Shown here in pieces: positions 21,291 to 45,704 of a stretch of DNA of 64,000 nucleotides (positions within the stretch are counted from its first letter, which is position 1; every line of letters starts with the position of its first letter). The notes under the pieces were generated by a model. The model was not told the DNA's origin and did not search any database. It saw only the letters and a list, made by a program, of their open reading frames with translations. The stretch comes from Macrostomum lignano (taxonomy: Eukaryota), in contig NIVC01000793.1 of assembly GCA_002269645.1 (NCBI GenBank), forward strand, positions 310,001-374,000, read 5' to 3'. The position numbers were made by a program, and so were the translations under genes.

Positions 21291-22257
21291 AGTATCTAGA
21301 GTTTCAAAAGTGCCTAATGTCTCAGTCACGTGTGTCAAATATTTCTATTATCTCGATGTGTGCAGAGTCACTTGTCAAAATTTGTTCAAAAGTATTGCTA
21401 CACCTCCTGTTGGTGTCTGGCAGTAGTATCTGTCGTTTCAATTGGCTTGTACAGTCGACATTTAGCCTTTTTTAATGCTGGCGAATTGCCTAACCCTTAT
21501 TAACTGCTCCAACCTGTCATGAAAGCTGCTATCCCCTGACTGCTGCACTCGCGTACGAGCTACTAGTTTCAGTAGTATGCACGCGTTAAATGTTAGTTTT
21601 AGCGCGCACCGGTGCAATAGAGCCTTTCAACTGGTAAAGATTTCTTCAATTGTTGTACTTTTATACCAGCTCAGCCACCAGCCGTCTCTTCTGCCTAGTC
21701 CTGCCACTTAATCCCCTGGCAACTGACCGACTTGAGCTGGTTTGAACCATGAGATTGTTTGTTTGTTATGCCTCTTGTTGCTGTGTTCAAGCTGTTTTAA
21801 TTAATAATATAATCAAGCGCCAATCCTGATTTAAAGCTGTTAACCCGATCTATTCGTGTAATTAATTATTTATCTGTTCTGAAAGAGTCACTGTAAGCAA
21901 AATTATGCGCTTCTAAGATCGATTTTTCCGGATTCAATCCGACCCTTTTTATTTTTTCTCTAGCCACTGTTCCTTTTATATATTAATATCAGTAGTATTT
22001 GTACGTTTTTAACGTCATTAATTGTGTTCTTGTACTTATAATTTCTAATCGTTAGTTTAGTTTTTTTTAAAGAAGTAAAATTCCAAGCCTGCTTTTTGTG
22101 TTTAATAATCGTCTAACGACATCTGGTTTTCAACTGATTCAATCTGACCGATTGGTGTGTTAACTAATAAACTGCAAATTGGCTTTGTATTGTCAACTTT
22201 TGCAGACTTTATTGTGTGCGACTGAACCTATTTATCTGATCTGCTTACTTTGTTACA

Positions 22258-22892
22258 TCTGCTGGGCCAGCCTCCCAGATCCTCAGTTGCTGGGCCAGCC
22301 TCCCAGATCCTCAGTTGCTGGGCCAGCCTCCCAGATCCTCAGTTGCTGGGCCAGCCTCCCAGATCCTCAGTTGCTGGGCCAGCCTCCCAGATCCTCAGTT
22401 GCTGGGCCAGCCTCCCAGATCCTCAGTTGCTGGGCCAGCCTCCCAGATCCTCAGTTGCTGGGCCAGCCTCCCAGATCCTCAGTTGCTGGGCCAGCCTCCC
22501 AGATCCTCAGTTGCTGGGCCAGCCTCCCAGATCCTCAGTTGCTGGGCCAGCCTCCCAGATCCTCAGTTGCTGGGCCAGCCTCCCAGATCCTCAGTTTCTG
22601 GCCAGCCTCCCAGATCCTCAGTTGCTGGGCCAGCCTCCCAGATCCTCAGTTGCTGGGCCAGCCTCCCAGATCCTCAGTTGCTGGGCCAGCCTCCCAGATC
22701 CTCAGTTGCTGGGCCAGCCTCCCAGATCCTCAGTTTCTGGCCAGCCTCCCAGATCCTCAGTTGCTGGGCCAGCCTCCCAGATCCTCAGTTGCTGGGCCAG
22801 CCTCCCAGATCCTCAGTTGCTGGGCCAGCCTCCCAGATCCTCAGTTGCTGGGTCAGCCTCCCAGATCCTCAGTTGCTGGGCCAGCCTCCCAG
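22258..22892. repeat. 28-bp highly homogeneous minisatellite (GCTGGGCCAGCCTCCCAGATCCTCAGTT) ending about 45 nt before the NFS1 ATG
   Basis: About 23 nearly identical copies. Confidence 0.98.
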
Positions 22893-22937
22893 AAATATTT
22901 AGTGATAAACTATTCCTTCTAAATTCAGCCGCTCAGC

Positions 22938-25773: not shown

Positions 25774-25827
25774 GTTTTTGTTCGGAGTCTAATGTGTCTA
25801 AATAAGGGTTGCGACGCACTAAAAATT

Positions 25828-26290
25828 TCCTAATCCCAATCGCTAATCTGGGAATCCCAATTCCTAATCTGAGAATCGCAATCGCTAATCTGGGAATCCC
25901 AATTCCTAATCTGGGAATCGCAATCGCTAATCTGGGAATCCCAATTCCTAATCTGGGAATCGCAATCGCTAATCTGGGAATCCCAATTCCTAATCTGGGA
26001 ATCCCAATCCCTAATCTGGGAATCCTGATTCCTAATCTAGGAATCCCAATTCCTAATCTGGGAATCCCAATTCCTAATCTGGGAATCCCAATTCCTAATC
26101 TAGGAATCCCAATTCCTAATCTGGGAATCCCAATTCCTAATCTGGGAATCCCAATTCCTAATCTGGGAATCCCAATTCCTAATCTGGGAATCCCAATTCC
26201 TAATCTGGGAATCCCAATCCCTAATCTGGGAATCCCAATCTCTAATCTGGGAATCCCAATCCCTAATTTGGGAATCTTGGGAATGCCTAT
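25828..26290. repeat. 21-bp minisatellite (CTAATCTGGGAATCCCAATTC) 3' of NFS1
   Basis: 7-residue periodicity in the ORF track; about 22 copies. Confidence 0.97.
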
Positions 26291-26847
26291 CCATAATCAG
26301 CTAGGAATCCCTTGGGATTTCCAGCAGTTAAGAACCTCGTACGCATGCTTCAGGTTTAACAAATAAGAATCCTATTTTATTACAGGTTTTTGATTGACAG
26401 TCAATCGTTATTCAGTGTACATGACCATCTATCTGTCCAAAACTGACTCTGTGACACCCCAGCTAATTTGATTTTTTCGGCTAGCGCTGCAAATTACCGC
26501 TGACCGTCTTGATGATAAAAATCGTACTATTATATCCAGAAAAGCGTCGGTTACATTCTTCTAGAATAGAAGGATGATTTGTCGCTTACATTTTTTCTTT
26601 TTTTCATGTGCTTTGTGCACTAGCACAGTACATACTACTAAACAAGTCGAGTAGCGTAGCATTAGAAACATGTTTATATCGCCCGCGTGTTTTTTGTTTG
26701 TTCACCTGCCGATTAATTAATTAGGCTTGATGATGCTCACTCAAAGACATACATAGTATAGAGCTTGTAACTTCATTATTGTTGTGCGCTCCTATTGTTA
26801 TATATATGATTGAGCATCTGACAAGAAACATCAATTAGTCCTCCATC

Positions 26848-27300
26848 CATAATCTGGGAATTCCAATTCCTAATCCGGGAATCCCAACCCCTAAATCTAG
26901 TAATCCCCATCCATAATCTGGGAACCCCCATCCCTAATCTAGGAATCCCATCCCATCCATCATCATGCTAAAAATGTGATGTCTATATACATCCCTAATC
27001 TAGAAATCCCATCCCTAATCTAGGAATCCCCATCCCTAATCTGGGAATCCCCATTCCTAATATGGGAATACTATTCCCTAATCTAGGAATCCCCTTCCCT
27101 AATCTGGGAATCCCATCCCTAATCTAGGAATCCCCATCCCTAATCTGGGAATCCCCATTCCTAATATGGGAATACTATTCCCTAATCTAGGAATCCCCAT
27201 CCCTAATCTGGGAATCCCCATCCCTAATCTCGGAATCCCATCCCTAATCTAGGAATCCCCATCCCTAATCTGTAAATCCCCATCCCTAACCTAAGAATCC
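26848..27300. repeat. Second array of the same 21-bp family (CCCTAATCTGGGAATCCCCAT)
   Basis: Same core as 25828-26290 but more degenerate. Confidence 0.92.
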
Positions 27301-27571
27301 ACACGTTCGTATGTAACTTAACTTTCAAATGTCATAATGCAAAAAAGCTTGAACGCAGGGTGTACGGTGGCCCTGACTTTGTCATACTGTCATGTTTTTT
27401 TCAATTTTAGTACCGATCCATCAGCCATTTGAATGCTAACAAATAAAACAGAATGAGACTATGTTTGCAACACTTGAAGTTTCGTATTTCACATCTGGTT
27501 GCGCGGTTTCAGAAAAAAATCGAATGTTGACCCACTTATAAGAGCTTGTGCTTTACTCCGTAAAACCGCTT

Positions 27572-27620
27572 GATTCACTGACTAAGTTAAGCAAAGTTGG
27601 CCTCGGTTAGTACGCAGATG
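27572..27620 (+). pseudogene. 5S rRNA-like fragment, copy 2
   Basis: GATTCACTGACTAAGTTAAGCAAAGTTGGCCTCGGTTAGTACGCAGATG resembles recalled invertebrate 5S GATCACCGAAATTAAGCAGCGTCGGGCGCGGTTAGTACTTAGATG. Confidence 0.55.
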
Positions 27621-28187
27621 AATAAGCCCAATGTTATAAATCCTAAGTTAATTGTTGCCCAATTTGAATGTCCTCATTCTTAATTAGCCTTAATCCAGTA
27701 TTTATAGGCTTTATTATTTATTCCTATTTTTCTACTAAGAAATTTTTTGTTGCCCGTCAATATTCTGGCTAGAGAAGGAAATTGCATGCCCGATTTTCAG
27801 CTTCCAGTAGCCGAAATCTCCCCAACCCCTTTTTAGCTATATGCATTCCCTGCGCTTATATAGTAAACTCTTGCGGAGAAGTTCCAGCCGCTGCTCTGAA
27901 ATATTCTTGACCCTCCCAATTTCCTGTTCTACATGTAGATGGTCTCAAGCCATTCATGGGCTGTGTGCCTCGATCCTCTAAACCTCTCTCTATCCTCCGG
28001 TCTTTGATGGCATTGCAAAACTGAGGAAATTGCTATCTGCCCTCCGACTTTCCAACGATAAATTATTAAATTTCACCAGCCAATCACGGTTAGGCTGGCT
28101 TATAACTATTGTGTATTTATAGTGCCATTTCAATGTCCATTAAGCATATTTTGCCCCAACTGGCCGGTGCTGCAGCTACCTTAACTT

Positions 28188-29510: not shown

Positions 29511-30380
29511 ACTATATAAACTTGTACAATATGCATCTCCAATTGCACTGAAATGCAGCAAAGCAAGAGGTAATTAGTACTCGTAATTAATTCATACCTG
29601 AAATGCCATAGAGAATTGATGAATTGGATCGGCTCAGGCAGAATAGAAATATCCCACACTACTATGCTCGCTAGCTGGGGATAGGGATGGGAGGTCGCTA
29701 GACTTGGGCTTGGGATGTTTGTTCAGAGAGAGAGTGGTCTTCCCCATTGCCCCGTTCCCCAAGGCGTCGGCTTCTCGGACTGGGGCGCAGGTGCGCCGCC
29801 CTGGCTGCATTTTCGAAATTGAGGATGTCGGACGCTGGTGTGGGAGGGGCGCGACTCCAAGCCCGCTGTTTGTCCTGCTGCACTTTCAGGGGGATTAGGC
29901 AGGCATGCCGGAGAAACAGGCAGAGTGGCGAGGGGGTGGGGGGCGAGAACCGTTTTCATCCGCTTACTTCCATTAAAAGAAGGCTCTTTCAAAAGCAAGG
30001 AACTCCCCTACCATTGTTTCCGTAGGAGGAAATACGGAATAGATTTATTCATAGTTGTACTGTTTCGGAGTTGATGTGTCACAGTCTATTTTGTCTAATC
30101 GAAGCAATCAAGCTCATTGGAGCGGCTATCACCCACTTTCCTACTTATGGAAAGCAGAATAAGAGAGTGGAAGAGAATGAGGAAAATTTTGAGGATGTGA
30201 GGATAATTGGGGAAGAATGGTGGACGCGCGCGCTGCTGGCGTGTTGTAGGAATTGTAGGAACAACAGTTCAACAAACACAGGCAGAGCAGCTGATGGCTC
30301 CCGGCTCTCTCTGATTGGCCAGAGCAGTGGGGGTTGGGGCTCACACCAACTCCCGCAGAGGTCTCTTGTGTCTCTTATCC

Positions 30381-33300
30381 ATGCTGGCTGCATCACGACT
30401 GGCCTTCTGTCTGCGTCTGGGCGCGTCCCAATCCTATAACTGTGCGTGCCGACAGCGAGTGGGGAGCTTGAACCCCTTTGCCACAACTGCATCGGCTATG
30501 GGCTGCTTCAACGCCTCCCAGAACCTGCAGCAGCAGCAGCAAGGATGGGTGGCTCCTTTTGTTACCGTGTGCTGCTCTGCATCAATTTTGATCAGCTGCG
30601 GACTGGCTGCTGCGGTGCACCTGCGACGGCAGACTCGGGTGAGATGGGGGTGGATGCACATCCTGGGGACAGGTGCTGTGAGACTAAGGACAGATGCTGT
30701 GAGACTGGGGACAGATGCTGCGAGACAGATGCTGTGAGACTGGGGACAGATGCTGTGAGACTGGGGGACAGATGCTGCGAGACAGGTGCTGTGAGACTGG
30801 GGGACAGATGCTGCGAGACTGGGGACAGATGCTGCGAGACAGGTGCTGTGAGACTGGGGGACAGATGCTGCGAGACAGGTGCTGTGAGACTGGGGACAGA
30901 TGCTGTGAGACTGGGGACATGCTGTGAGACTGGGGACAGGTGCTGTGAGACTGGGGACATGCTGTGAGACTGGGGACAGGTGCTGTGAGACTGGGGACAG
31001 GTGCTGTGAGACTGGGGACATGCTGTGAGACTGGGGACATGCTGTGAGACTGGGGACATGCTGTGAGACTGGGGACAGATGCTGCGAGACAGATGCTGTG
31101 AGACTGGGGACAGATGCTGTGAGACTGGGGGACAGATGCTGCGAGACAGGTGCTGTGAGACTGGGGGACAGATGCTGCGAGACTGGGGACAGATGCTGCG
31201 AGACAGGTGCTGTGAGACTGGGGGACAGATGCTGCGAGACAGGTGCTGTGAGACTGGGGGACAGATGCTGCGAGACTGGGGACAGATGCTGTGAGACTGG
31301 GGACAGATGCTGTGAGACTGGGGACAGATGCTGCGAGACTGGGGACAGATGCTGTGAGACTGGGGGACAGATGCTGCGAGACAGGTGCTGTGAGACTGGG
31401 GACAGGTGCTGTGAGACTGGGGACAGGTGCTGTGAGACTGGGGACAGATGCTGTGAGACTGGGGACAGATGCTGCGAGACTGGGGACAGATGCTGTGAGA
31501 CTGGGGGACAGATGCTGCGAGACAGGTGCTGTGAGACTGGGGGACAGGTGCTGTGAGACTGGGGACAGGTGCTGTGAGACTGGGGACAGGTGCTGTGAGA
31601 CTGGGGACAGGTGCTGTGAGACTGGTGACAGGTGCTGTGAGACTGGGGGACAGGTGCTGTGAGACTGGGGAGGTGGTGTGAGACTGGGGACATGCTGTGA
31701 GACTGGGGACAGATGCTGTGAGACTGGGGACAGGTGCTGTGAGACTGGGGACAGGTGCTGTGAGACTGGGGACATGCTGTGAGACTGGGGACAGGTGCTG
31801 TGAGACTGGGGACATGCTGTGAGACTGGGGACAGGTGCTGTGAGACTGGGGACAGGTGCTGTGAGACTGGGGACATGCTGTGAGACAGGGGGACAGAGGC
31901 TGTGAGATTAGGGGAGAGGTGCCGGGAGTAAAATCCCTAACAATCGTTCAAGAACGGGGATCAGAGAACAAAGAGATCTCACTTTCAAACTGCGAGAAAA
32001 CATCATTCCCCTGAATTCGAGGCTGCTTCTTGAAGGCGAGTCTCCGGACAGATCGGGCAGCGGGAATTGGGATGCAATTCTCTTGGGGATCGGGGAAAAC
32101 GGCGAAATGGGATAGGAACTCAATTTTTTTGGGAGGTTGTTGAGCAGCTCAGGATATAGGTGGACAGTTCCCACGGTTAACAGCTTTTGCATTGATTTCT
32201 GCTTGCGGAAGAAGAAGGACGAGTTTCGCAAAAGATTTTCTATAACTAGTTGGAGTGGCTCAATGTGGCTCGAGTGCACGGCACTGCTGCAGGTCGGGAA
32301 GAGAGGCTGAGTGGCAGTGAGCAGTCCATCACTCGGACCATTCCGCACCAAAGGCAATGAGATCAATCCTATCAATACAGGGCATGGGTTCCAAACCCAC
32401 GCTGTATCTGCTGCAAAGTTTCAATTGCGTGCAGCATCTTTTTTGACGGAAGATTCTTAGTGGTTCTTAGAAATTGGGATCGAGCTCGATTTTGAAACGT
32501 CAACAATTGTCTTCAATTCTATAGATTGGAGGTTCTGGTTTGGTTTTCAGTCGTGAATTTTGGGTTTAATTTATGAGGCTCTATACTTATTAGAAGTTAG
32601 AGATCATTTTATAGTCATTTTCGTCGTCATTAATGACGAAACATGATTTTTGTAGAAAATTCTGGCAAAAAAGCTACGCCGAAGACAGAAGCAACGTCAA
32701 AGAAAATGACTGCGACGATGGTGGGAAGCCTGCGCAGTGATGAATTGATTTAATTAATGCCGTGCTAGTGTGTACTGCGTACTTACATTTTGGCCTCAGC
32801 TTCGACCCTATGCTTCCCGGATGAGTTGGCCATTTCAGCGTGACAAAACACTTCCGAGTCGTGTCTCTAATGCCCCACTGCTCCCCCTGTCTTCCTGGCC
32901 TGGTTACTAATTAGGCAACCCCGGCCCGATACATATTCTGACGCGGATGCGTGTCTTTTGCCAAGGAGGTCCAGAGCCAGAACCTCGGGTAGCAACTCTT
33001 TCCCATTGCCAGACAACTATTTGTGGCTGCAGTTTTTCAGTTTGACTAAAAATAAAAAAAATCATTTCCAACTCATTTTCCGTGTGAGTTGAAAAGCGCT
33101 AGTCAGCCTATAGTCGTCTGAAAAATAGGTGGTTTGGGGAAGAGTTGCTACCCCAAGTTCTGGCCCTGAGTCTCCTTGGCTCTGCTCTCATCATATTTCT
33201 TTCCATCCTCACGCGCCTGTCCGTGGGGATCTTCTCCTAGGAAAAGCGTGATTTCTGCGGCACCGCCATCTGGTTTGAGGTGAGGGGGTCAGATATTGAG

Positions 33301-36300
33301 TCTGAGTTGATTAGCCTGATTAAATTCGTGCCGAACTAACCCTAACCCATCCCAGACCCTTTGATGAAGTAGCTGAGAGATATGTGTGCACAAATTTTCC
33401 ACATCGACTGTTCAGCACGCGCCTTGCGGAATCTTCTGGATTGCTGCTGCTGGTTGTGGAATTTACCACCAGCTTAAAACAAGCTGATTGGTAGTTTTGT
33501 GCTTTTGGCACGTGGCTGAATTAGCTAATTAATTTCTTAATTTTTAGTATAGTGGACTAGCCATTTCGGACGGCCCCTTTGGGGGAGTAAACTGTGCAAT
33601 ATCTGTCTAACCTATTAAAAATTAGAACGTAGCTCGTACTTATCCCAGTGAGAATTTCAGAAGACCAGTTACCATTGAGCACTCATTGAGAGACCAGTTA
33701 CCATTGAGCACTTATTGAGAGACCAGTTACCATTGAGCACTTATTGAGAGACCAGTTCCCATCTTTTTTTAACAATCTGTCATTGTAATCTATCCACACG
33801 CTGTTTCAAATCGAATATCTCAATCATTTAAAAAGTTCTATCTATTCCTGTCGGCGTGTTGAGCACGGAATCTCAGCCCGGCGTGGTCAATGATGAAAAG
33901 CCGTGCGTGGGTGAGAGAGGGATAAAAAAGCCTCTGAGGATGAGGCGGAGAATCTGAGTGTGAAAGCGAGCTCAAATTACCTCGTTTCATGCAAGGCCCG
34001 ATGAAGAGAGAGACAGAGTCTGGGAATGGGGCGAGATACGAAAAAAGATAAAAGACAGAGACAGACGGCCGTGCTAAACAGGCTTGGGGAGTCTGAAGCA
34101 TATTTTTTCATGTTATCGGACTCAAACTCAAACGCGCAATGCCAACCGCAGAAGACAGGGAGGGAGGAGAGAAAATGGCGACGAGTTCCAAAGATGATGC
34201 GGGACGGATGCTGGGGCAAAGTTGAGCCGATGGGCTGGATGAGTAAAGCTGCAGGCTTGAAAGTGGAGGAGCAAGGCCTGCGGGACCAGAGTGTGTATAA
34301 AGGCGTACATTTTATCACGACTGACTCCCTCCTTCTGCGATCCTAAATCCCCTGCCGCGCTCCAGTCTCTCCCTCTTAGAATACTTTCTTGCCATCCTTT
34401 CTGATAAAAGAAAATATGCTGACAGGGGTAAAGAATATATGGCAGATCATAATACGTAGTTATGCTGGCAAATACAGAGACAAGAAAATGAAGTGGTAGA
34501 GGGGAGAGGAAAAGCGACTGTGAAGTAGACAGGGAGAGGGAGACAGTGGGAAGGGGAGAGAAAGAGGAGGGAGAGAAAAACAGTCCTCAGTTTTTTCCAA
34601 GGAAACTGAGACGGGCAGAAGAGGGTGTTTTGAGATTAACCCCGCATACTTGGTTTCGCTTGGCCTGTCAAAGCTTACTAATTATACCATGCATGGAGAG
34701 CATTGCAGTATGAAAAAGGGTGTCAATAATGGTCAGTAATAGGCTTGCTTGAAGAGATCATCTTTTGCTGTGCTGGTTAGTGCGGCTTCTCAGCCAATTT
34801 GTCCGCTTACGATCTTATAGAGCCATTTCTTCAACCCCGGGCTGAACCCTACGCTAGAGATGAAACCGCTTCGCGCTCATATCCCAGCGTAAATACCAGC
34901 TTCTCTTGCTCCGCCTTGCTAATAGTGGAGTTCGAGCTGAGGGCATTCAGCAGGGGGATTGAGAGACTCGATGGCTGGAATCAAACAAGTGGAAGAGATA
35001 GGGAATGTAGGGAGATTGGGAATGTAGGGAGAGAGATGGGGAATGTAGGGAGAGATGGAAATGTAGGGAGAGAAGGGGAATGTAGGAAGAGAGAAGGGGA
35101 ATGTAGGAAGAGAGATGGGGAATGTAGGGAGAGATGGGGAATGTAGGGAGAGATGGGGAATGTAGGGAGAGATGGGGAATGTAGGGAGAGATGGGGAATG
35201 TAGGGAGAGAGAGATGGGGATGTAGAGAGGGATGGGGAATGTAGAGAGAGATGGGGAATGTAGGGAGAGATGGGGAATGTAGGGAGATGGAGAATGTAGG
35301 GAGAGATGGGGAATGTAGGGAGAGATGGGGAATGTAGGGAGAGAGAGATGGGGATGTAGAGAGGGATGGGGAATGTAGAGAGAGATGGGGAATGTAGGGA
35401 GAGATGGGGAATGTAGGGAGATGGAGAATGTAGGGAGAGATGGGGAATGTAGGGAGAGATGGGGAATCTAGGGAGAGATGGGGAATGTAGGGAGATGGGG
35501 AATGTAGGGAGATGGAGAATGTAGGGAGAGATGGGGAATGTAGGGAGAGATGGGGAATCTAGGGAGAGATGGGGAATGTAGGGAGATGGGGAATGTAGGG
35601 AGATGGGGAATGTAGAGAGAGAGAGAGATGGGAATGTAAGGGAAGAGAACATGAAAGAAAAGTAGTACTTTAGCAACAGAAAATGCGAACCAACCTGAAC
35701 TAAATCAATTCTGCCGAGGTAATTCCGTACATTTTTTCTGACTGTACATGTAGACCCTATCAATGGGCCTCACCTTTTAATATGCGAGATCGGGCTGTTA
35801 AATGAGCCGGAGTGAAGACCGTACTACTGGAAGAGTTAGTGAGAGACTCAACTTCTGTCTTCTCACTTTAGCGCAAGGATTAGCGGCCTCTCTACTCCAC
35901 CACTTGTTGCTGTGTTCCCCTCTGTCGGCGATTAATTAATGCCGATTACGAGGGAGCTGCTCACTCTACCCCTCCAAAGGTTTTTTTTCACTCGGCCAAG
36001 TGAAACGAACAAGGAGCACAGGCTTTGACAAGAAAATTGGGCTGAGCGGATTGCTGACTTGATATATTGGTTTAGTGCCTGCTTTGCCTACTCAAGCAGT
36101 GCCTTTTCTGGTTTGAATAGCCAAGTAGTTCCAAGGACTGGGCTGTCTGGCTTGAAGTATTGGTTTTAACGTTGTTGGTTGTCTTCTAAACTCCGAAACT
36201 TTAATGAGGGATATCTGGAGCTTCTGTGCCAGTTTACTACGGAAGTCTGATGTCTGATTTTTGAAGTCGTGACTTCGTTTGCGGATCTAAGATCTTATGT

Positions 36301-39300
36301 AGATACCCGATCTTGGACCTGTAGATACCCTTTGTAGATACCCTTAAATATATGTAAATACCCGATTTAGGACCTTATGTAGATACCCGATCTAGGACCT
36401 TATGTAGATACACGATCTTGGACCTTATGCAAATACCCGATCTAGGACCTGTAGATACCTTTTGTAGATTCCCTTATTTATATCTAGATACCCGATCTAT
36501 GTAGGGAGATCTTATGTAGATACCCGATCTAGGACCTGTAGATACCCTTTGTAGATACCCTTAGATATATGTAGATACCAAATCTCGGGCATTGCATGCA
36601 GGTAGACTTGTTTTTGCTGCTTGAAAGCTTAGTACAGCATTAATTAATAATTATCGAGAGCCTTAGCTGCAGGAAGCTCGTGCATCGGCACGCAGCTTCC
36701 TCTCCAACATTTCCTGCTAGCAGTTCTCAGTTGATGGGCTTTGTTCATCATCTTCATCAATTTTCTACCAGGAGAAGAAGTTGGAAACAGTCCGATAGGC
36801 GCGCGACGAGTCTCAATGATTTATTTATGGCTCGCTAGTCAAAGCCCCATCCAACTCAGCCTCCCCCCCTGGTTGCCGTGTCAGAGATCCGGGCCGACTT
36901 CCTCGCTTTTATTTCCCGAAAGTTTCAGGGGAAATTTCCCCTGAAGCCAAAACCGCAGGAGTCAGACAGAGATGGAGAGGTGGCCTGGATGACTGCTCAT
37001 AAATTCAGACAATTTGCATCCAGAAATAGACTCTCCTACTGAACTGCCTCTGCTCGAGTCGCTGAAAATGGCGAATATTCCCCGAGCTCGTTTGCCTCGG
37101 CTCTCAGCTCTGCGTTATGAATTATGAGAACTTGAAAAACTTTTTCTTCGGTTCATTCATTCTCTGGGTATTGGATCTCGTCTATTTGGACTTTTTTGTC
37201 ACTATTTTTCTCATCAGTTGTACTGTAATTGAGAATATTGCCAGTGAGGAGAGGGGTGGTTGTCAGTGAGGAGTGGAGTGGTTGTCAGTGAGGAGTGGAG
37301 TGGTTGTCAGTGAGGAGTGGGGTGGTCGCCAGTGAGGAGTGGGGTGGTTGCCAGTGAGGAGTGGGGTGGTTGTCAGTGAGGAGTGGGGTGGTTGTCAGTG
37401 AGGAGTGGAGTGGTTGTCAGTGAGGAGTGGGGTGGTTGCCAGTGAGGAGTGGGGTGGTTGCCAGTGAGGAGTGGGGTGGTTGCCAGTGAGGAGTGGGGTG
37501 GTTGTCAGTGAGGAGTGGGTGGTTGCCAGTGAGGAGTGGGTGGTTGCCAGTGAGGAGTGGGGTGGTTGCCAGTGAGGAGTGGGGTGGTTGCCAGTGAGGA
37601 GTGGGGTGGTTGCCAGTGAGGAGTTGGGTGGTTGCTGTTGCCAGTGAGGAGTGGGGTGGTTGCCAGTGAGGAGTGGGGTGGTTGCTGTTGCCAGTGAGGA
37701 GTGGGGTGGTTGCCAGTGAGGAGTGGGGTGGTTGCTGTTGCCAGTGAGGAGTGGGGTGGTTGCTGTTGCCAGTGAGGAGTGGGGTGGTTGCTGTTGCCAG
37801 TGAGGAGTGGGGTGGTTGCCAGTGAGGAGTGGGGTGGTTGCCAGTGAGGAGTGGGGTGGTTGCTGTTGCCAGTGAGGAGTGGGGTGGTTGCTGTTGCCAG
37901 TGAGGAGTGGGTGGTTGCCAGTGAGGAGTGGGGTGGTTGCCGTTGCCGTTGCCAGTGAGGAGTGGGGTGGTTGAGAGGCGTGATAAAGAGGCAGCGTGTT
38001 TACGAGTATTTTACGAGTTTACGAGTTTACGAGTTTACGAGTTTACGAGTTTACGAGTTTACGAGTTTACGAGTTTACGAGTTTACGAATATTTACACTT
38101 AGATTCAAACAGAATCTACTTCGTACGTAACAAAACTATTTTTCTCGTCCACCTCATTCAGGCTGTCAAGTCTGTTGGGCAGCTAGTAGTCAATCAGGTG
38201 TTGCTGGGCACCTGCTGTCAGAACGTCTCGGTAAGACGCAATTAATTAATGGTTTCCATTTTAAACTGCGATGAGTTCGTGCTCAGAGATCACTCCAATC
38301 CAATCCCTCAAATCCAATACAGCACTTGACCAGCGTGTGGATGGAGGGCAGCGCCGGCTGTCACCTTTCTAATTGGCTCTTTCACCTGGGCAGCCTGTTG
38401 GTCTACTCCGATATTGGACTGCATTGCTGGCGGTGAGCAGCTCTGGATTGGGTGGGTGCGAGAGTGAGGGTTGGAGTGGGTGCGGGAGTGAGGGGTGGGG
38501 TGGGTGCGGGATTGAGGAGTGGGTTGGTGCGAAATTGAGGAGCGGGGTGGGTGCGGTAAGGAGTGGGGTGGGTGTAAGAGTGAGGAGTTGGTTGGGTGCG
38601 GAAGTGAATGAGGAGTGGGGTGGGTGCGGAAGTGAATGAGGAGTGGGGTGGGTGCGGAAGTGAATGAGGAGTGGGGTGGGTGCGGAAGTGAATGAGGAGT
38701 GGGGTGGGTGCGGAAGTAAGGAGTGGGGTGGGTGCGGGAGTGAGGAGTGATGGGTGGGTGCGGAAGTGAATGAGGAGTGGGGTGGGTGCGGAAGTAAGGA
38801 GTGGGGTGGGTGCGGGGGTGAGGAGTGTTATACATCGTAAGTGCAGGTGTTCAGATAAATACAGGCACTTTAACAGGGAATCAGGATGCTGGGATCATAA
38901 ATCAAACTATGATTGTGACCGATTGGCCTGCCATGGCTTCCAACCCTCAGCGTGGCGGTCATCATGGACTTCGGTCGCCTCAGGCGCACTCATGTAAGTG
39001 ACGCCCAAGTGATGAAGCGGCTCAGCTGCCTTGTAGCTTTATGGATAGCAGCTTTGGCAGGAGTCACGACGGTGTCTCTGACGGGTCACCTGACCTGGTT
39101 TGTGGCGGACTCGAACGGTCAAGGGCGGTGTTTTCAGATAAGCATTGACGGCTGCTTGAGTGCCGGTAAGTGGCTGGTTGGACCTGTTTCAACTTATGTC
39201 ACTGTTGCATCAGTGTGAGATCACTCCTAAATTATAAAAAGTGACGATAAATTTCAGAGCACCTTCTCATCGTTCTTTGGTCGCTGAGGCAGGCCTACAG

Positions 39301-42300
39301 TGCGCGAGTCGCGCCAGACTGTTACAATAATTCATTAAAGTCGGCAGTTTGTCTGTACAATTTTGCACTGGGCTGGCCTGTGCTGTACGCCGTGCTGTGA
39401 GTGAGGAATGAGGTGGCGGGTGAGGAATGGGGTGGTGGGTGGAGAATGAGGTGGTGGGTGAGGAATTGGGTGGCGGCTGAGGAATGGGGTGGTGGGTGGA
39501 GAATGGGGTGGTGGGTGAGGAATGGGGTGGTGCGTGAGGAATGGGGTGGTGGTTGAGGAATGGGGTGGTGCGTGAGGAATGGGGTGGCGGGTGAGGAATG
39601 GGGTGGTGGGTGGAGAATGGGGGTGGTGGGTGGAGAATGGGGTGGTGGTTGAGGAATGGGGTGGTGGTTGAGGAATAGGTTGGTGGGTGAGGAATGGGGT
39701 GGTGGGTGGAGAATGGGGTGGTGGTTGAGGAATAGGTTGGTGGGTGAGGAATGGGGTGGTGGGTGGAGAATGAGGTGGTGGGTGAGGAATTGGGTGGTGG
39801 GTGAGGAATGGGTTGGTGGGTGAGGAATGGGGTGGTGGGTGTATAATGGGGTGATGCGATTTTAGCTATTAGATGTGGAAAACTCGCGAGTACATGTAAT
39901 TAACTTAATTACAATATTGATTCCAGACTGATGATTCATGAGTCGGAGCTGCCAGATTTTTATGCCAAATTGGCGGCATTTTTGTTCACCATGACAGTCG
40001 TGACTTCCGTACAGCTCGTCTTCGTGTTGCAGCAAGTGAGGATTTTTGGAAATCCATATCGTACTAAAAAAGGAATCGTATCTACCTTTGTTGTACCGCA
40101 ATCCAAGTCTCGCCCATGAGACAAATAAACGTCTCTTTCCATTTCTCTCTTTCTCCCCATTCCCTCCCGTTCGAACACAACAGTTAATAACAACAGCTTT
40201 CGTTTTATCTATTCTCCTCAACATTGTCAATCAAGCATCGCTAATGAACCTACCCACAGAGTTAAGACCTTATCCGTGTTCTTTACAACGCATTGCGGGT
40301 TTTGCAAAGCCAAACAGTCGGATCCCATGGTAATTAGCCCACAGACTGCCTATCCCATGTATCCTTTGCACTGAAAATTCTCACAACGGGGACCGCCTTG
40401 TGCGAGAGGGTGAAAACCCATGTAGCAAGTTAGGCAGCCCGCAGGGAGAGGCACTTCCCTGCTGGCTACTACAGTTCCTTTTCCCTACATCGGTGGGCCG
40501 AACGCAGAGGGTTCATAGTGATCTTGTATCGCTAGATATTGGCATTTCGGCAATAGCGCAATCTCTGCTCTCGGCTTCAAAGAAAATTAGGGGTAGATAG
40601 GGGGACTGGCAGGGAGAGAAGAGGGCGATAATGGGAGGGAGATAAGGGTTGAGATGGAGAGTGAGAGTAAGAAAGATGGGAAGTGAGAGGGAGAGATCGG
40701 GAGTGAGAGTAAGAAAGATTGGGAGAGATGGGGATGTGAGAGGGAGAGATGGGGAGGGAGAGGGAGAGATGGGGAGTGAGAGGGAGAGATGGGAAGTGAG
40801 AGGGAGAGATGGGAAGTGAGAGGGAGAGATGGGAAGTGAGAGGGAGAGATAGGAAGTGAGAGGGAGAGATGGGAAGTGAGAGGGAGAGATGGGAAGTGAG
40901 AGGGAGAGATGGGAAGTGAGAGGGAGAGATGGGAAGTGAGAGGGAGAGATGGGGAGGGAGAGGGAGAGATGGGGAGTGAGAGGGAGAGATGGGAAGTGAG
41001 AGGGAGAGATGGGAAGTGAGAGGGAGAGATGGGAAGTGAGAGGGAGAGATGGGAAGTGAGAGGGAGAGATGGGAAGTGAGAGGGAGAGATGGGAAGTGAG
41101 AGGGAGAGATGGGAAGTGAGAGGGAGAGATGGGAAGTGAGAGGGAGAGATGGGGAGTGAGAGGGAGAGATGGGGAGTGAGAGGGAGAGATGGGGAGTGAG
41201 AGGGAGAGATGGGGAGTGAGAGGGAGAGATGGGGAGTGAGAGGGAGAGATGGGGAGTGAGAGGGAGAGATGGGGAGTGAGAGGGAGAGATGGGGAGGGAG
41301 AGATGGGGAGTGAGAGGGAGAGATGGGGAGGGAGAGGGAGAGATGGGGAGGGAGAGGGAGAGATGGGGAGGGAGAGGGAGAGATGGGGAGTGAGAGGGAG
41401 AGATGGGGATAAAAGCCACCCAAGTGCAGCTGGAATGATAAATATGCTTATTTAATCCTTCAGCGACCCCGCCTGAACCACCTGAGCCAATATCCAGGCT
41501 CAATGTGAGCTGCCATCCCTTCCCAACCCTCGCTACCCCCACCGCAGATTTCTTGCACGCCTCACCGCCTCCCAGCAGCTGCTGCTCCATCTTCTATTCT
41601 GCCCCATCGTGCTCAAATGGAGAATAGATCGATCGTGAGAGGCTGGGGCATTCGAAACTATGGAAGCAGAAGGAATTGTAGCCGTCGCCTTGAACAATTG
41701 CTGGTCGGGAGGGTGGGCGGGGGCTGAAGGGAAAGTGCTTCTGATAGATTGATTTGCTCATATATACTATGATTAATCGGCTATTCTTTCTGATATTTTT
41801 TCATGAGGATTTATTACCGAGGATATATATTTACCCCTTAGAAAATTCAGCACCTGGAATCTGCTGATCTGTTGGGCCGAAATCAAATTTCACCTTAACC
41901 CATGCGCCTACTGAGATGAATCAACTGTTATCCTCAGGTGCAATTAGAATCAACTGTTATCCTCAGGTGCAATTAGAATCAACTGTTATCCTCAGGTGCA
42001 ATTAGAATCAACTGTTATCCTCAGGTGCAATTAGAATCAACTGTTATCCTCAGGTGCAATTAGAATCAACTGTTATCTTCAGGTGCAATTAGAATCAACT
42101 GTTATCCTCAGGTGCAATTAGAATCAACTGTTATCCTCAGGTGCAATTAGAATCAACTGTTATCCCCAGGTGCAATTAGAATCAACTGTTATCCTCAGGT
42201 GCAATTAGAATCAACTGTTATCCCCAGGTGCAATTAGAATCAACTGTTATCCTCAGGTGCAATTAGAATCAACACCTGCCAACCTCAGCACCTGATCGCT

Positions 42301-44858
42301 TGACGCCCTATCCCTAAATCCTTTGCCAGCTGCTGCAGATCCGCAGCGGCTATGAGGAGATCAGCATCCCGGTATCCGACATCACTGGTGGCTCGGCCAC
42401 CCACCGAGTGGACGTGTGCCTGAGCAACAGCGGCCGGGTTGTCAGCATGAAGTGCGTGCCCTGCGGCCAGCTAATTCTGTCGCCGTTTCACGAGCACCAG
42501 CGCCAGCACCAGCGGGAGCTGCAGCAACAGCAGCAGCACCTGGGAGAAGCCGAGGCAGGCAGTTCGCTAGCGGCTCAGGAGACGAGCAGCGAGGCGAGAG
42601 CTGCGGTTGAAGTCTTCAAGGGATACACCGAGGTGAGCTGGCTAAGTGCGAAGGAGGGAGCGGATCAAGAAATGACAAAGAGAGCGGATCAAGATATGAG
42701 GGAGGGAGCAGATAAGGAATGAGGGAGAGAGTCGATCAAGAAATGAATGAGTAAACGGTTCAAGAAATGAGGGAGGGAGCGGATCAAGAAATGAGGGAGG
42801 GAGCGGATCAAGAAATGAGGGAAAGAGCGGATCAAGAAATGAGGGAGGGAGCGGATCAAGAAATGAGGGAGAGAGCGGATCAAGAAATGAGGGAAAGAGC
42901 GGATCAAGAAATGAGTGAGAGAGCGGATCAAAAAATGAGGGAAAGAGCGGATCAAGAAATGAGTGAGGGAGCGAATCAAGAAATGAGGGAGAGAGCGGAT
43001 CGAGAAATGAGGGAGAGAGCGGATCAAGAAATGAGGGAAAGAGCGGATCAAGAAATGAGGGAGGGAGCGGATCAAGAAATGAGTGAGGGAGCGGATCGAG
43101 AAATGAGTGAGTGAGCGGATCAAGAAATGAGGGAGAGAGCGGATCGAGAAATGAGGGAGAGAGCGGATCGAGAAATGAGGGAAAGAGCGAATCAAGAAAT
43201 GAGGGAGAGAGCGGATCGAGAAATGAGGGAGAGAGCGGATCAAGAAATGAGTGAGAGAGCGGATCAAGAAATGAGTGAGAGAGCGGATCAAGAAATGAGG
43301 GAGGGAGCGGATCAAGAAATGAGGGAAAGAGCGGATCAAGAAATGAGGGAAAGAGCGGATCAAGAAATAAGGGAGGGAACGGATCAAGAAATGAGGGAAA
43401 GAGCGGATCAAGAAATGAGTGAGGGAGCGGATCAAGAAATGAGTGAGAGAGCGGATCAAGAAATGAGTGAGAGAGCGGATCAAGAAATGAGGGAGGGAGC
43501 GGATCAAGAAATGAGGGAGAGAGCGGATCAAGAAATGAGGAAGGGAGCGGATCAAGAAATGAGGGAGAGAGCGGATCGAGAAATGAGGGAGAGAGCGGAT
43601 CAAGAAATGAGTGAGGGAGCGGATCAAGAAATGAGGGAGGGAGCGGATCAAGAAATGAGGGAGGGAGCGGATCAAGAAATGAGTGAGGGAGCGGATCGAG
43701 AAATGAGGGAGAGAGCGGATCAAGAAATGAGGGGGACAGAGCGGATGAAGAGACAGAGGAGGGAGTGGATGAAGAGACAGAGGAGGGAGCGGATGAAGAG
43801 ACCGAGGAGGGAGCGGATGAAGAAACAGAGGAGGGAGCGGATGAAGAGACAGAAGAGGGGGTGGATGAAAGAGCGGATGACAGCAGGAAAAAGCTACTGC
43901 TGCGGGGGCGCAATGGAGAGCATCAATTCAGCTAAAAGATTCCACAATAGCCATCCAGCCTCTGTCTAAAGCAAAAAAGAATCGGCCTGAACAATGCAGA
44001 GGTCCTTGAATAAGCTGTTGTTTCGCTTTCCGCAGCCGGGCGTCTCTTAATAGAAAAGAGAGAAGCATTTAAAAGTACATTTGCCAATCTCCATGCTAAA
44101 AAAGCTGAGACAGCTATCGTTTTCCCTATAGTAGCTAGCTAGACCATTTGTCCTTGCCCCAGCATACGAGGTGGGCAAGGTTGGGTGACAATGGGCCGCT
44201 GTGTTCTTCTTTTTGTCTGCTTCCCGATGCTGTTTCTGCTTGGTGCCAGAATAGCATTACTATTTTGTTTTATTATACAGTACGGGTTAATGGCTTAGCT
44301 ATATACTACTGTTGTTAAGTAGCTTTGTAATACAAGCGGGTAGCTTAAATTTTAGTTTTTCAACAAACAATAGGTTGTCACCCCCTCACGAACTTCACAC
44401 TCGCTCGCCAGGAGGAGTTCGACCGCCTGGTGGACATGTTCCAGCAGCTCAAGACGGAGAATCTGCACCTGAGCAAGCGGCTCGAGTCCATGCGCTGCGC
44501 CCAGCAGCAGCGCTCCATCGGTGGCCGACGTCGGCCGTGCATGTCGACAACATCGTCGTCGCTCTGCCTGGGCGGCGGCAACCCCGGCGGCGGGGCTGGC
44601 TGGGAGTCCAGCGACACCCTCAACACGGCACTGACTGGAGGGCCCGCGGCCAGCGTCGGATCCTGCGACACCCTTGCGGATGAGCGCGAGGCAGGAGATG
44701 AGGACGGCAGGCTGGAGTCCAGCAGTCGCCGCACGACGACGCTGCCAAAGTCGGTCAGCTTCCCGGCCACGGCTTCGGGGACCGCCGGGAACGGGCTGCA
44801 GTTCCTGCCGGCTATTCCAGAGCGGCACTGCCTGCAGAGCAGGGAGCAGTTCTTCTGA
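30381..44858 (+). CDS. Putative divergent 7TM (secretin/adhesion-class-like) membrane protein, about 586 aa; exons 30381-30638, 38162-38230, 38323-38432, 38951-39165, 39258-39396, 39927-40035, 41464-41504, 41548-41634, 42347-42632, 44412-44858
   Basis: Nine GT-AG introns with consecutive phases 0,0,2,1,2,0,2,2,0 give one 1761-nt frame. It has at least seven hydrophobic segments, a Cys at the top of the third (GCHLSNWLFHLG), a Cys in the following loop (GRCF) and a coiled-coil-like tail (EEEFDRLVDMFQQLKTENLHLSKRLESMR). The start codon and family are inferred. Confidence 0.7.
30660..31910. repeat. 21-bp minisatellite (GTGAGACTGGGGACAGATGCT) with 14-bp deletion variants, at the start of intron 1 of the 7TM-like gene
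   Basis: Direct periodicity. Confidence 0.97.
32960..33180. mobile_element. MITE-like element with about 45-bp terminal inverted repeats
   Basis: GCCAAGGAGGTCCAGAGCCAGAACCTCGGGTAGCAACTCTT versus the reverse complement of the right end GCCAAGGAGACTCAGGGCCAGAACTTGGGGTAGCAACTCTT; no clear target-site duplication. Confidence 0.7.
33661..33760. repeat. 29-bp unit x3 (GAGACCAGTTACCATTGAGCACTTATTGA)
   Basis: Period 29 measured. Confidence 0.9.
34995..35640. repeat. 19-20-bp purine-rich minisatellite (GGGGAATGTAGGGAGAGAT)
   Basis: Direct periodicity. Confidence 0.95.
36290..36585. repeat. Degenerate array built on GTAGATACCC(GATCTAGGACCT)
   Basis: About 12 imperfect copies of variable length. Confidence 0.8.
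37243..37975. repeat. 22-bp G-rich minisatellite (CCAGTGAGGAGTGGGGTGGTTG) with 28-bp insertion variants
   Basis: Direct periodicity. Confidence 0.96.
38008..38087. repeat. 8-bp tandem repeat (TTTACGAG)n
   Basis: About 10 perfect copies. Confidence 0.97.
38445..38825. repeat. ~28-bp G-rich array (GAGGAGTGGGGTGGGTGCGGAAGTGAAT) filling intron 3 of the 7TM-like gene
   Basis: Direct periodicity, degenerate at the 5' end. Confidence 0.9.
39397..39850. repeat. 19-bp G-rich array (GTGAGGAATGGGGTGGTGG) filling intron 5 of the 7TM-like gene
   Basis: Begins at the splice donor. Confidence 0.95.
40660..41408. repeat. 20-bp purine-rich array (GAGAGGGAGAGATGGGAAGT)
   Basis: Direct periodicity, about 36 copies. 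Confidence 0.96.
41919..42273. repeat. 29-bp homogeneous array (AATCAACTGTTATCCTCAGGTGCAATTAG) x ~12
   Basis: Direct periodicity. Confidence 0.98.
42655..43880. repeat. 24-bp array (GAGCGGATCAAGAAATGAGGGAGA) in the last intron of the 7TM-like gene
   Basis: 8-residue periodicity in the ORF track; the unit switches to GAGCGGATGAAGAGACAGAGGAGG after about 43735. Confidence 0.97.
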
Positions 44859-45704
44859 GTCCAACAGTGGAGCTCAGACAGCGCCTCAGCGCTGGGGTTG
44901 TCGGAGTCAGGTTAGTGGGTTTAAACCATAGAAGCTGAATTGTCTATGGTCAAAAATCCTAATCAGTTCATCAAGTTCGATTTGGAACAATTTTAACTTT
45001 ATAAACAACTGTCAGTTTCTGTACTTTTGTACTTTAATTTCAGTTCCAGCTTTGATTGGTTCCGCAGAATTAAGTTTGCAGACATTCTGCTTTTTTGCGT
45101 AGATAAATCGTTGCTCATGTAGGTACAGTAGCTAGTACAGTTTAATGTACGTACACTCATTTTTATCCAGCAAACGTTTGCTTCCATTCTATAAGCAGTT
45201 ACATTTACATTCATTGTGTACAGTAATTCCGTATCGAATGTACATTACTAGCTACAGGTAATTAATATTTGATTGCGCACAGATTAAAATCCCAATCTTT
45301 GACAAATCTTCCACCAGTAAAATTCTCTGCTTCAAGCTCACAGCAGCAACTGTAATCCACTGTTAGAATTTGACTCGACTCCTAGATTTTTGTGTTCAAA
45401 TTGATTTTTGTTATGCCAATTGCCTAGAATTAGCAAATACTTTTAGCTATTCTCCCCTGTTTCATTTGCTTACAACTGAGTGTGACCACTAAATTTCCAC
45501 TTTATTTTAAAGTTCTGCATTAATTACCAATAAATTTCTAACCGTGGACAGAAAGCGCAGCTGATAAGACCGTTGCATATTGTGAGATCTCAAATGTAAC
45601 TGTAGAATGGTCTGCATTTGTATTATCCCTTACAATGCACTCAGATTGATACACGGGGATTATGAAGGAAACAATTTCAGGTTTGAAGAGTCTTGAGGAT
45701 TAAG

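What the first reader, a model, noticed from the sequence alone, without database searches (positions are those of the whole stretch)
30381..44858. Hidden 10-exon orphan 7TM-like receptor scattered among minisatellites
Seen: ten small exons (41-447 nt) join with nine GT-AG introns and exact phase continuity into one 586-aa frame. It reads ...NCACRQRVGSLNPFATTASAM...WVAPFVTVCCSASILISCGLAAAVHLRRQTR|AVKSVGQLVVNQVLLGTCC..|..GCHLSNWLFHLGSLLVYSDIGLHCW|RVAVIM..RLSCLVALWIAALAGVTTV..GRCF..|HLLIVLWSL..LYNFALGWPVLYAVL|LMI..LAAFLFTMTVVTSVQLVFVLQQ|..|FLARLTASQQLLLHLLFCPIVLKWR. A long tail follows with a coiled-coil-like segment. Established: class B/adhesion GPCRs have a Cys at the top of TM3 bonded to an ECL2 Cys, an S-x-Q-G-like TM7 motif, and a CxC...FA GPS motif before TM1. 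Inference: this is a very divergent adhesion/secretin-like receptor with only a ~55-aa ectodomain carrying a degenerate GPS-like CAC..FA stretch and no GAIN domain. There is possibly an eighth hydrophobic segment, so the topology is uncertain.
Basis: partly seen in the sequence, partly recalled or inferred. Interest (0 to 1): 0.75.

Follow-up and report, generated by a model that had tools for sequence, protein, structure and literature searches.

The report
Unannotated flatworm class C receptor gene
The ten small exons are real and encode a seven-helix receptor in the flatworm Macrostomum lignano. It belongs to the glutamate/GABA-B type (class C) family, not the adhesion/secretin family, and it is a very divergent copy with no large sensor domain that the deposited genome annotation missed.

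Summary
I rebuilt the 10-exon, 586-aa, all-GT-AG model exactly as described.

The family assignment is wrong. The spliced protein matches Pfam 7tm_3 (PF00003, class C GPCR) at 59-61 bits against a cutoff of 33.5, E about 1e-16, over residues 58-291. No 7tm_2, GPS or HRM match appears even at E<=10.

Exon groups 2+3 and 5+6 also hit successive parts of the profile on their own.

The only solved relatives detected are GPR158 and GPR179, and only weakly.

No sensor-domain exons lie between the upstream NFS1 gene and exon 1, so the short ectodomain stands.

The window is Macrostomum lignano contig NIVC01000793.1:310001-374000. No gene is called over exon 1, and no identical protein exists in the protein collection.

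Exons 9 and 10 are clearly coding and carry a four-heptad leucine zipper. Their link to the 7TM part through the 41-nt exon, the 43-nt intron and the 87-nt "eighth helix" exon is unproven, and three other in-frame joins exist.

Verdict: a new, very divergent member of a known kind. Interest is moderate to low.

The parts
30381..30638 (+). Exon 1. ATG, weak signal-peptide-like start (MLAASRLAFCLRLGASQS), ~35-aa Cys-containing N-terminal stretch with one NAS glycosylation sequon, TM1, and the start of intracellular loop 1.
   Evidence: The Pfam 7tm_3 match starts at residue 58, profile position 9. The hydropathy peak at 61-79 scores 2.13.
38162..38230 (+). Exon 2. Intracellular loop 1 motif (AVKSVG) and TM2.
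   Evidence: Exons 2+3 alone hit 7tm_3 profile positions 38-95, E=0.009. AVKSVG aligns with SIRASG of GPR158.
38323..38432 (+). Exon 3. End of TM2, extracellular loop 1, and TM3 with the conserved Cys122.
   Evidence: The 38323 acceptor gives 61.2 bits, against 56.9 for 38287 and 53.3 for 38347. Cys122 aligns with the TM3 Cys of GPR158.
38951..39165 (+). Exon 4. End of TM3, intracellular loop 2, TM4, and extracellular loop 2 with Cys206 and Cys214.
   Evidence: The alternative acceptor 38984 and alternative donor 39118 lower the Pfam score to 48.3 and 49.7 bits. The hydropathy peak at 172-190 scores 1.99.
39258..39396 (+). Exon 5. TM5, short intracellular loop 3 (PDCYNNSLK), and TM6 with Trp257.
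   Evidence: Exons 5+6 alone hit 7tm_3 profile positions 174-241, E=3.5e-4.
39927..40035 (+). Exon 6. Extracellular loop 3 and TM7.
   Evidence: Removing exons 6+7 truncates the profile match at position 225/251 and drops the score to 57.8 bits. The hydropathy peak at 279-297 scores 2.10.
41464..41504 (+). Exon 7 (41 nt, RPRLNHLSQYPGS). A probable juxtamembrane segment. Reading through its donor gives a stop after one more codon.
   Evidence: It is one of only four stop-free 41-nt AG..GT candidates in intron 6 and the only one outside a minisatellite that pairs a clean pyrimidine-rich acceptor with a GTGAG donor. It aligns to IPKFSHSSNNP of GPR158. Its codon score is in the top 3% of stop-free non-coding windows. 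Retaining intron 7 gives ..GSM*.
41548..41634 (+). Exon 8 (87 nt, in-frame cassette). The eighth hydrophobic segment, FLARLTASQQLLLHLLFCPIVLKW. Its inclusion is uncertain.
   Evidence: It is preceded by a 43-nt intron, whereas the next smallest introns in this gene are 92 nt. Hydropathy is 1.40. Its codon score is only in the top 6% of non-coding windows. Skipping it keeps the frame. It cannot replace TM7 in a real splice variant.
42347..42632 (+). Exon 9. Tail segment SGYEEISIPVSDITGG...KGYTE. Alternative in-frame acceptors exist at 42330 and 42339.
   Evidence: Strong coding signal at 0.48 bits/codon with GC3 of 0.78. The 33 codons before its first Met are also coding (0.53 against -0.29 and -0.24), so it is an internal exon. 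It has no credible homologue among 1.84 billion representatives. The single-sequence AlphaFold model has low confidence, pLDDT 59.
44412..44858 (+). Exon 10. Four-heptad leucine zipper (EEFDRLVDMFQQLKTENLHLSKRLESMR, Asn at one 'a' position), a Ser/Gly/Thr-rich tail, and the stop codon at 44856-44858.
   Evidence: Coding score 0.39 bits/codon with GC3 of 0.85. The heptad register has a = F,F,N,L and d = L,L,L,M. The sequence turns AT-rich right after the stop, with ATTAAA at 45283 and AATAAA at 45529.
30300..30380 (+). Putative promoter or 5' leader. It holds an inverted CCAAT box (CTGATTGGCCAG) about 60-70 nt before the ATG, and a CCCGCAG acceptor-like site 24 nt before the ATG. The latter is a possible spliced-leader trans-splice site.
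   Evidence: Sequence read. Trans-splicing is common in this species (PMC5730564). This part is inference only.

Best explanation
This is an intact protein-coding gene of Macrostomum lignano that is absent from the deposited annotation. It encodes a very divergent class C (glutamate/GABA-B type, Pfam 7tm_3) G-protein-coupled receptor.

The receptor has no Venus-flytrap, cysteine-rich or Cache ectodomain. Only about 35-55 residues lie outside before TM1.

Shown:
- Exons 1-6 encode a complete, collinear 7tm_3 seven-helix bundle. It has the TM3/ECL2 cysteines, the loop-1 (V/I)K(S/A)xG motif and a class-C-like loop 3.
- Loop charges fit the normal N-out, C-in topology.

Inferred:
- Like other class C receptors it acts as a dimer.
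- With no sensor domain, it either binds a small ligand inside the helical bundle, is constitutively active, or serves as a partner subunit. The known models are GPR156, GPRC5 and the 7TM-only behaviour of GABA-B2.
- The downstream coding exons 9 and 10 most likely form its cytoplasmic tail. Their four-heptad leucine zipper with a core Asn would help pair two chains, as the GABA-B1/B2 tail coiled coil does.

The exact connection between TM7 and the tail is not settled. It may run through exon 7, with or without exon 8, or directly from exon 6.
For: Pfam and profile evidence:
- 7tm_3 scores 59-61 bits (cutoff 33.5), E 1.6e-16 to 6.9e-16, over residues 58-291 and profile positions 9-241 of 251. 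It is the only family reported at E<=10.
- Exon groups hit successive profile segments independently.
- GPR158 and GPR179 are the only PDB sequence matches, with aligned TM3 Cys, Trp, Arg and loop motifs.

Topology and coding signal:
- There are seven hydropathy peaks, and K/R residues are enriched in loops 1-2, 3-4 and after TM7.
- Codon usage favours the predicted frame in all ten exons.
- Exon 9 is coding upstream of its first Met, so it needs an upstream coding exon. The 7TM exons are the only + strand coding sequence between NFS1 and it.
- The stop codon is followed by an AT-rich stretch with poly(A) signals.

No large ectodomain:
- No Pfam domain was found in open segments between the NFS1 stop (25773) and exon 1, in intron 1, or on the other strand.

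Annotation status:
- The organism and contig were identified.
- No gene is called over exon 1, and no identical protein exists in the collection.
Against: - No RNA evidence was available. The deposited annotation is transcriptome-based (PMC5730564), so absence from it suggests low or no expression.
- No homologue was found apart from the profile match. The tail has none at all, so constraint cannot be shown.
- Several class C hallmark residues are changed. By the GPR158 alignment plus general knowledge, the TM3 Lys becomes His143, the loop-3 Glu becomes Asn242, and the TM7 'PK' becomes 'PR'.
- The 43-nt intron is an outlier.
- If exon 8 is included and spans the membrane, the tail would be outside the cell.
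Confidence: 0.72

Rival explanations
1. One reading: a very divergent adhesion/secretin-like (class B) receptor with a degenerate GPS-like stretch and no GAIN domain.
For: It has seven hydrophobic segments, a Cys at the top of TM3 with Cys residues in ECL2, and a CxC...FA string in the N-terminus.
Against: No 7tm_2, GPS, GAIN or HRM match appears at E<=10, while 7tm_3 scores 59-61 bits. The PDB matches are class C orphans only. The TM3/ECL2 cysteine pair is not specific to class B (established knowledge).
Confidence: 0.02
2. Two products. The receptor mRNA ends soon after TM7, for example by retaining the 43-nt intron, which gives ..QYPGSM-stop and about 313 aa. Exons 9-10 would belong to a different transcript or to an alternative isoform only.
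For: Read-through of the exon-7 donor hits a stop at once. The 43-nt intron is unusually short for this gene. The tail has no homology tie to any GPCR. Pfam cannot tell the post-TM7 variants apart, at 60.6-61.2 bits.
Against: Exon 9 is coding before its first Met and has only acceptor sites upstream, so it needs an upstream coding exon. No other + strand coding segment exists between NFS1 and exon 9. Four different joins to the 7TM part are all in frame. The 3' UTR-like sequence and poly(A) signals follow exon 10. I did not scan the sequence after exon 7 for poly(A) signals.
Confidence: 0.18
3. A decaying or silent gene copy: an unexpressed relic of a class C receptor whose frame happens still to be open.
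For: It is absent from a transcriptome-based annotation. Conserved activation residues are changed (plus general knowledge). No orthologue was detected.
Against: All ten exons are open, with consensus splice sites at all 18 intron ends. Sense-frame codon bias is seen in every exon. A short cell-type-restricted receptor mRNA is easily missed in whole-animal RNA-seq (inference).
Confidence: 0.12

Closest known systems
GPR158 / GPR179 (class C orphans; GPR158 = metabotropic glycine receptor)
   Same: They are the only solved structures with detectable sequence similarity (E 5.7e-4 and about 0.07-0.09) across TM2-TM7. The TM3 Cys, loop-1 motif and TM5/loop-3 region align. Neither has a Venus-flytrap domain (established knowledge).
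   Different: GPR158 and GPR179 carry an ectodomain of about 400 aa (Cache-like plus stalk), whereas here only about 55 aa precede TM1. Identity is low. The tails are unrelated. Here a Trp sits at the TM6 position typical of mGluR/CaSR (inference from spacing).
GPR156 and GPRC5A-D (class C receptors lacking the large extracellular region)
   Same: The architecture is the same: a short N-terminus, a 7tm_3 bundle and a long C-tail. GPR156 is a constitutively active homodimer and GPRC5D is a homodimer (PMC11621567 and PMC11187071, listed).
   Different: No pairwise sequence match to their PDB entries passed E<=1-10. The resemblance is therefore in architecture, not demonstrated orthology.
GABA-B receptor subunits
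   Same: Both have a class C bundle plus a C-terminal coiled coil used for pairing two chains (established knowledge). The zipper here has four heptads with a core Asn.
   Different: GABA-B subunits have Venus-flytrap domains, and their coiled coil follows TM7 closely. Here the zipper lies about 140 residues after TM7, there is no flytrap, and there is no detectable pairwise similarity.
Flatworm 'Glutamate-like' GPCRs (Zamanian et al. 2011, PMC3261222)
   Same: They come from the same phylum and the same GPCR family. Atypical, strongly diverged members are described there.
   Different: Those atypical receptors still have a diverged ligand-binding domain. This gene has none detectable, and it shares no word-level similarity with anything in the protein collection.

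Membership tests
Class C GPCR (Pfam 7tm_3, PF00003) | Significant match to the 7tm_3 profile over the whole helical bundle, above the curated cutoff. | tested here: met
   Scores are 59.1-61.2 bits against a cutoff of 33.5, over residues 58-291 and profile positions 9-241 of 251.
Class C GPCR (Pfam 7tm_3, PF00003) | Seven hydrophobic segments collinear with the profile, and N-out/C-in charge distribution. | tested here: met
   Seven Kyte-Doolittle peaks score 1.18-2.13, plus an extra eighth in exon 8. K/R counts are 4, 3, 1 and 2 on the inside loops and 0, 1 and 1 on the outside loops.
Class C GPCR (Pfam 7tm_3, PF00003) | Conserved Cys at the top of TM3 with a partner Cys in extracellular loop 2. 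| tested here: met
   Cys122 aligns with the GPR158 TM3 Cys. Cys206 and Cys214 lie in ECL2. The disulfide itself is not testable here.
Class C GPCR (Pfam 7tm_3, PF00003) | Activation microswitch residues: TM3 Lys, loop-3/TM6 Glu or Asp (NEAK/NDSK), and TM7 xPKxY. | tested here: inconclusive
   By the GPR158 alignment, Lys becomes His143, Glu becomes Asn242 (YNNSLK), and PK becomes PR in exon 7. The motif identities are from general knowledge, not from a curated alignment.
Class C GPCR, canonical architecture (mGluR/CaSR/T1R/GABA-B) | Large extracellular Venus-flytrap domain (ANF_receptor), with or without a cysteine-rich domain (NCD3G). | tested here: not met
   No such Pfam hit appears in the protein. 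None appears in + strand open segments of at least 30 aa between the NFS1 stop and exon 1 or in intron 1. No extra coding-like segments were found. Exons shorter than 30 aa would be missed.
Class B / adhesion GPCR | Match to 7tm_2 (PF00002). | tested here: not met
   It is not reported at E<=10 in any variant.
Class B / adhesion GPCR | GPS motif / GAIN domain (adhesion) or HRM domain (secretin) before TM1. | tested here: not met
   No GPS, GAIN or HRM hit appears at E<=10. Only about 55 residues precede TM1.
GPR158/GPR179 subfamily | Cache-like ectodomain and subfamily-level sequence similarity. | tested here: not met
   They are the best PDB hits but weak, at 22 and about 15 bits. No ectodomain is encoded.
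Dimeric coiled coil (leucine zipper) in the tail | At least 4 heptads with hydrophobic a/d positions. | tested here: met
   The register has a = F,F,N,L and d = L,L,L,M over residues 439-466. Pairing itself is not testable here.

The most novel reading that the evidence does not exclude
A lineage-restricted class C receptor type with no sensor domain. Exon 8 would be a true eighth membrane helix, placing the Cys-containing exon-9 module and the leucine zipper outside the cell. The receptor would then carry its extracellular part at the C-terminus, an 8-TM inverted-architecture class C receptor.
Probability: 0.07. Interest if true: 0.7.

Novelty: new member of a known kind. Interest (0 to 1): 0.35.

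Why it matters
Flatworm class C repertoires are reported as very small: 2 in Schistosoma mansoni and 9 in Schmidtea mediterranea (PMC3261222). This gene shows that transcriptome-based annotation of the repeat-rich M. lignano genome can miss receptor genes. Here the small exons are separated by minisatellite-filled introns.

A flytrap-less class C bundle with a tail zipper and altered activation residues would be a compact natural case for asking how such receptors signal without a sensor domain. M. lignano is transgenic-tractable, which makes that question approachable. The gene changes no general principle, because flytrap-less class C receptors and tail coiled coils are both known.

Tried and rejected
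- **Whole-protein and TM-only word-index searches.** No hit at E<=0.01 and E<=1. The first search may have been saturated by poly-Q and low-complexity words.
- **Full HMMER search of exon 9 against 1.84 billion representatives.** It gave four weak multi-stretch hits to unrelated repetitive proteins, judged spurious.
- **Handing the spliced protein to the representative search and to AlphaFold.** I did not try to get round this.
- **AlphaFold of exon 9 alone.** The pLDDT was 59, too poor for a fold search.
- **Exact look-ups of the exon-10 ORF and three start variants of the neighbouring EF-hand gene.** None is on record, so the annotation between window positions 35.8 kb and 64 kb could not be viewed directly.
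- **Exon 8 as an alternative TM7.** An artificial graft scored 62.1 bits. The only real splice path (exon 5 to exon 8) loses TM7 from the profile match (57.8 bits, ending at 225/251). Rejected.
- **Rfam scan of the window.** Nothing found.
- **Pfam on the introns and flanks, both strands.** Nothing above noise.
Full report
**Check of the observation.**
I enumerated in-frame GT/AG joins between them. This rebuilt a model with exons 30381-30638, 38162-38230, 38323-38432, 38951-39165, 39258-39396, 39927-40035, 41464-41504, 41548-41634, 42347-42632 and 44412-44858.

Exon sizes are 258, 69, 110, 215, 139, 109, 41, 87, 286 and 447 nt, giving 1761 nt or 586 codons plus TGA. Every donor is GTGAG or GTAAG, and every acceptor is a CAG, most of them behind a pyrimidine-rich tract. 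Minisatellites with 8-32 nt units fill most introns, and TRF masks 41.7% of the whole window.

**What the protein is.**
The spliced product matches a single Pfam family, 7tm_3 (PF00003), the class C GPCR bundle. The score is 59.1 bits (E 6.9e-16) for the full protein and 61.2 bits for exons 1-8, against a curated cutoff of 33.5. The match covers residues 58-291 and profile positions 9-241 of 251.

With the threshold relaxed to E<=10, no 7tm_2, GPS, GAIN or HRM match appears. The class B/adhesion reading therefore fails its own proposed test.

Against all PDB chains, only the class C orphans GPR158 (E 5.7e-4, residues 73-311) and GPR179 are found. The TM3 Cys, the loop-1 motif, a TM3 Trp and Arg, and the TM5/loop-3 region all align. 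mGluR, CaSR, GABA-B, GPR156 and GPRC5D chains did not pass the thresholds, so this is a very divergent member.

**Is the exon model right?**
For the 7TM part, yes.
Shifting the exon-3 acceptor gives 56.9 or 53.3 bits. Shifting the exon-4 acceptor gives 48.3 bits, and the exon-4 donor 49.7 bits.
- Exons 2+3 alone hit profile positions 38-95 (E 0.009). Exons 5+6 alone hit 174-241 (E 3.5e-4). These are independent pieces falling in the correct order.
- I trained a codon-usage score on the recognisable neighbouring genes. It prefers the predicted frame over the two other sense frames in all ten exons. Summed over the CDS it gives +144 bits in frame against -140 and -81.
- Hydropathy shows seven peaks matching the profile helices plus an eighth in exon 8. 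Basic residues concentrate on the predicted inside loops.

**N-terminus.**
The upstream + strand gene, NFS1, ends at 25773. Neither the 4.6 kb between it and exon 1, nor the 7.5-kb first intron, holds any open segment with a Pfam match. Neither holds a coding-like codon score either. The opposite strand and the downstream spacer are likewise empty.

The short ectodomain therefore stands, with one limit: exons under about 30 aa would escape this test. An inverted CCAAT box lies about 60-70 nt before the ATG, and an acceptor-like CCCGCAG lies 24 nt before it. That acceptor could be a spliced-leader site, since trans-splicing is frequent in this animal (PMC5730564).

**The tail.**
Exons 9 and 10 are unmistakably coding, at 0.48 and 0.39 bits per codon with GC3 of 0.78 and 0.85. 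The 33 codons of exon 9 that precede its first Met are as strongly coding as the rest. Exon 9 is therefore an internal exon that needs an upstream coding exon. The receptor exons are the only + strand coding sequence available.

Right after the stop codon the sequence becomes AT-rich and carries ATTAAA and AATAAA. Exon 10 starts with four clean heptads, a = F,F,N,L and d = L,L,L,M. This is a short leucine zipper with a core Asn.

The tail has no relatives. A full HMMER scan of 1.84 billion representatives with exon 9 returned only four weak, mutually unrelated repeat proteins. The single-sequence AlphaFold model is poor.

**The unsettled link.**
- Exon 7 has good splice sites. It aligns loosely with the post-TM7 'IPKFSHSSNNP' of GPR158 and scores in the top 3% of stop-free non-coding windows.
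- Exon 8 scores only in the top 6%. It is an in-frame cassette and follows an intron less than half the size of the next smallest, 92 nt.
- Other open products exist: skipping exon 8 (557 aa), joining exon 6 directly to the acceptors at 42330 or 42339 (549 or 546 aa), and retaining intron 7 (stop after ..GSM).
- The first AG of the exon-9 acceptor cluster has the best pyrimidine tract. It is 42329 and is in frame only with exon 6.
- Pfam cannot separate these variants, at 60.6-61.2 bits.
- An artificial graft suggested exon 8 looks like a TM7 (62.1 bits). The only real splice path that would use it that way loses TM7 from the match, so I reject that idea.

**Organism and annotation status.**
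The NFS1 exon is 100% identical to a Macrostomum lignano protein. Its locus, NIVC01000793.1:322932-345773 of assembly GCA_002269645.1, equals window 12932-35773 base for base. The window is therefore NIVC01000793.1:310001-374000.

No gene is called from the end of NFS1 to window position 35773. No protein identical to any part of the model exists in the collection that does hold this assembly's proteins. The gene is thus unannotated. The annotation was built from RNA-seq assemblies, so this also hints at low expression. That is the main argument for the silent-relic rival.

**Mechanism.**
Shown: a complete class C-type seven-helix bundle with a short, glycosylatable, Cys-containing N-terminus.

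Inferred from what is established for the family:
- It works as a dimer.
- Having no sensor domain, it either binds a ligand in the bundle, is constitutively active, or is a partner subunit, as for GPR156 and GPRC5 (PMC11621567 and PMC11187071, listed).
- The tail zipper would stabilise pairing, as in GABA-B.
- By the GPR158 alignment, the TM3 Lys and loop-3 Glu are His143 and Asn242 here. In other class C receptors those two residues hold the inactive state (my own knowledge). Losing them would fit a receptor with high basal activity, but this is speculation.

**Novelty and verdict.**
Flytrap-less class C receptors and tail coiled coils are both known. Flatworm 'atypical glutamate-like' receptors have been described, but they retain ligand-binding domains (PMC3261222).

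Interest is moderate to low unless exon 8 proves to be a real eighth membrane helix.

Noticed in passing
window 1-64000: The window is Macrostomum lignano contig NIVC01000793.1:310001-374000 (assembly GCA_002269645.1). Recognisable neighbours on the + strand are cytosolic malate dehydrogenase (321-734 and about 1704-1991), ATAD3 (about 8.8-14.5 kb), a BTB-kelch protein (16.2-20.9 kb) and NFS1 (23.8-25.8 kb). On the - strand are an EF-hand CHP/tescalcin-like gene (53962-54666), E2F (57517-58323) and ecdysoneless/SGT1 (62365-63903).
   Followed up: partly
window 30639-44411 (introns of the receptor gene): Six of the nine introns hold long minisatellites, all G-rich on the sense strand (GC skew +0.3 to +0.5). 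In four of them the array starts 0-24 nt after the 5' splice site: donor 30639 with array 30663, 38433 with 38445, 39397 with 39397, and 42633 with 42653. The repeat units themselves contain GTGAG-like strings, which are potential cryptic donors or G-run splicing enhancers.
   Followed up: partly
window 38286-38296 and 39217-39227: The two repeat-free introns are both exactly 92 nt. They share an exact 11-mer, GAGATCACTCC, 27-41 nt upstream of their acceptors. These are the only two exact copies in the 64-kb window, and the position fits a branch-point context.
   Followed up: partly
window 42327-42346: Exon 9 is preceded by three CAG acceptors, 9 and 8 nt apart, giving exon starts at 42330, 42339 and 42347. 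The first two are in frame with a phase-0 upstream exon (exon 6). The third is in frame with a phase-2 exon (exon 7 or 8).
   Followed up: yes
L002 (NIVC01001533.1:257759-272876) vs window 15057-27971: A second, roughly 89-99% identical copy of the BTB-kelch/NFS1 region exists, consistent with the known redundancy of this assembly. That contig ends 2.2 kb after NFS1, so the paralogous receptor copy could not be examined.
   Followed up: partly
window 10933-12651, 19335-20900, 22179-23014, 30434-31876, 40577-41590, 42642-43969, 52887-53965: Minisatellites generate many long spurious ORFs (up to 572 aa) in several frames on both strands. Any ORF-based gene call here would be misled.
   Followed up: no
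window 44352-44911, - strand: The antisense frames of exon 10 are also open (170-177 aa) and score nearly as coding-like as the sense frame (0.24-0.29 against 0.34 bits per codon). This is expected for GC3-rich coding DNA, but it means strand assignment of exon 10 rests on splice sites, the zipper and the 3' UTR.
   Followed up: partly
window 53962-54666, - strand: This apparently intact single-exon EF-hand (CHP/tescalcin-like) ORF has an MGxxxS N-terminus (possible myristoylation site). It was not found as an exact annotated product with any of three start codons, so it may be unannotated or modelled differently.
   Followed up: partly
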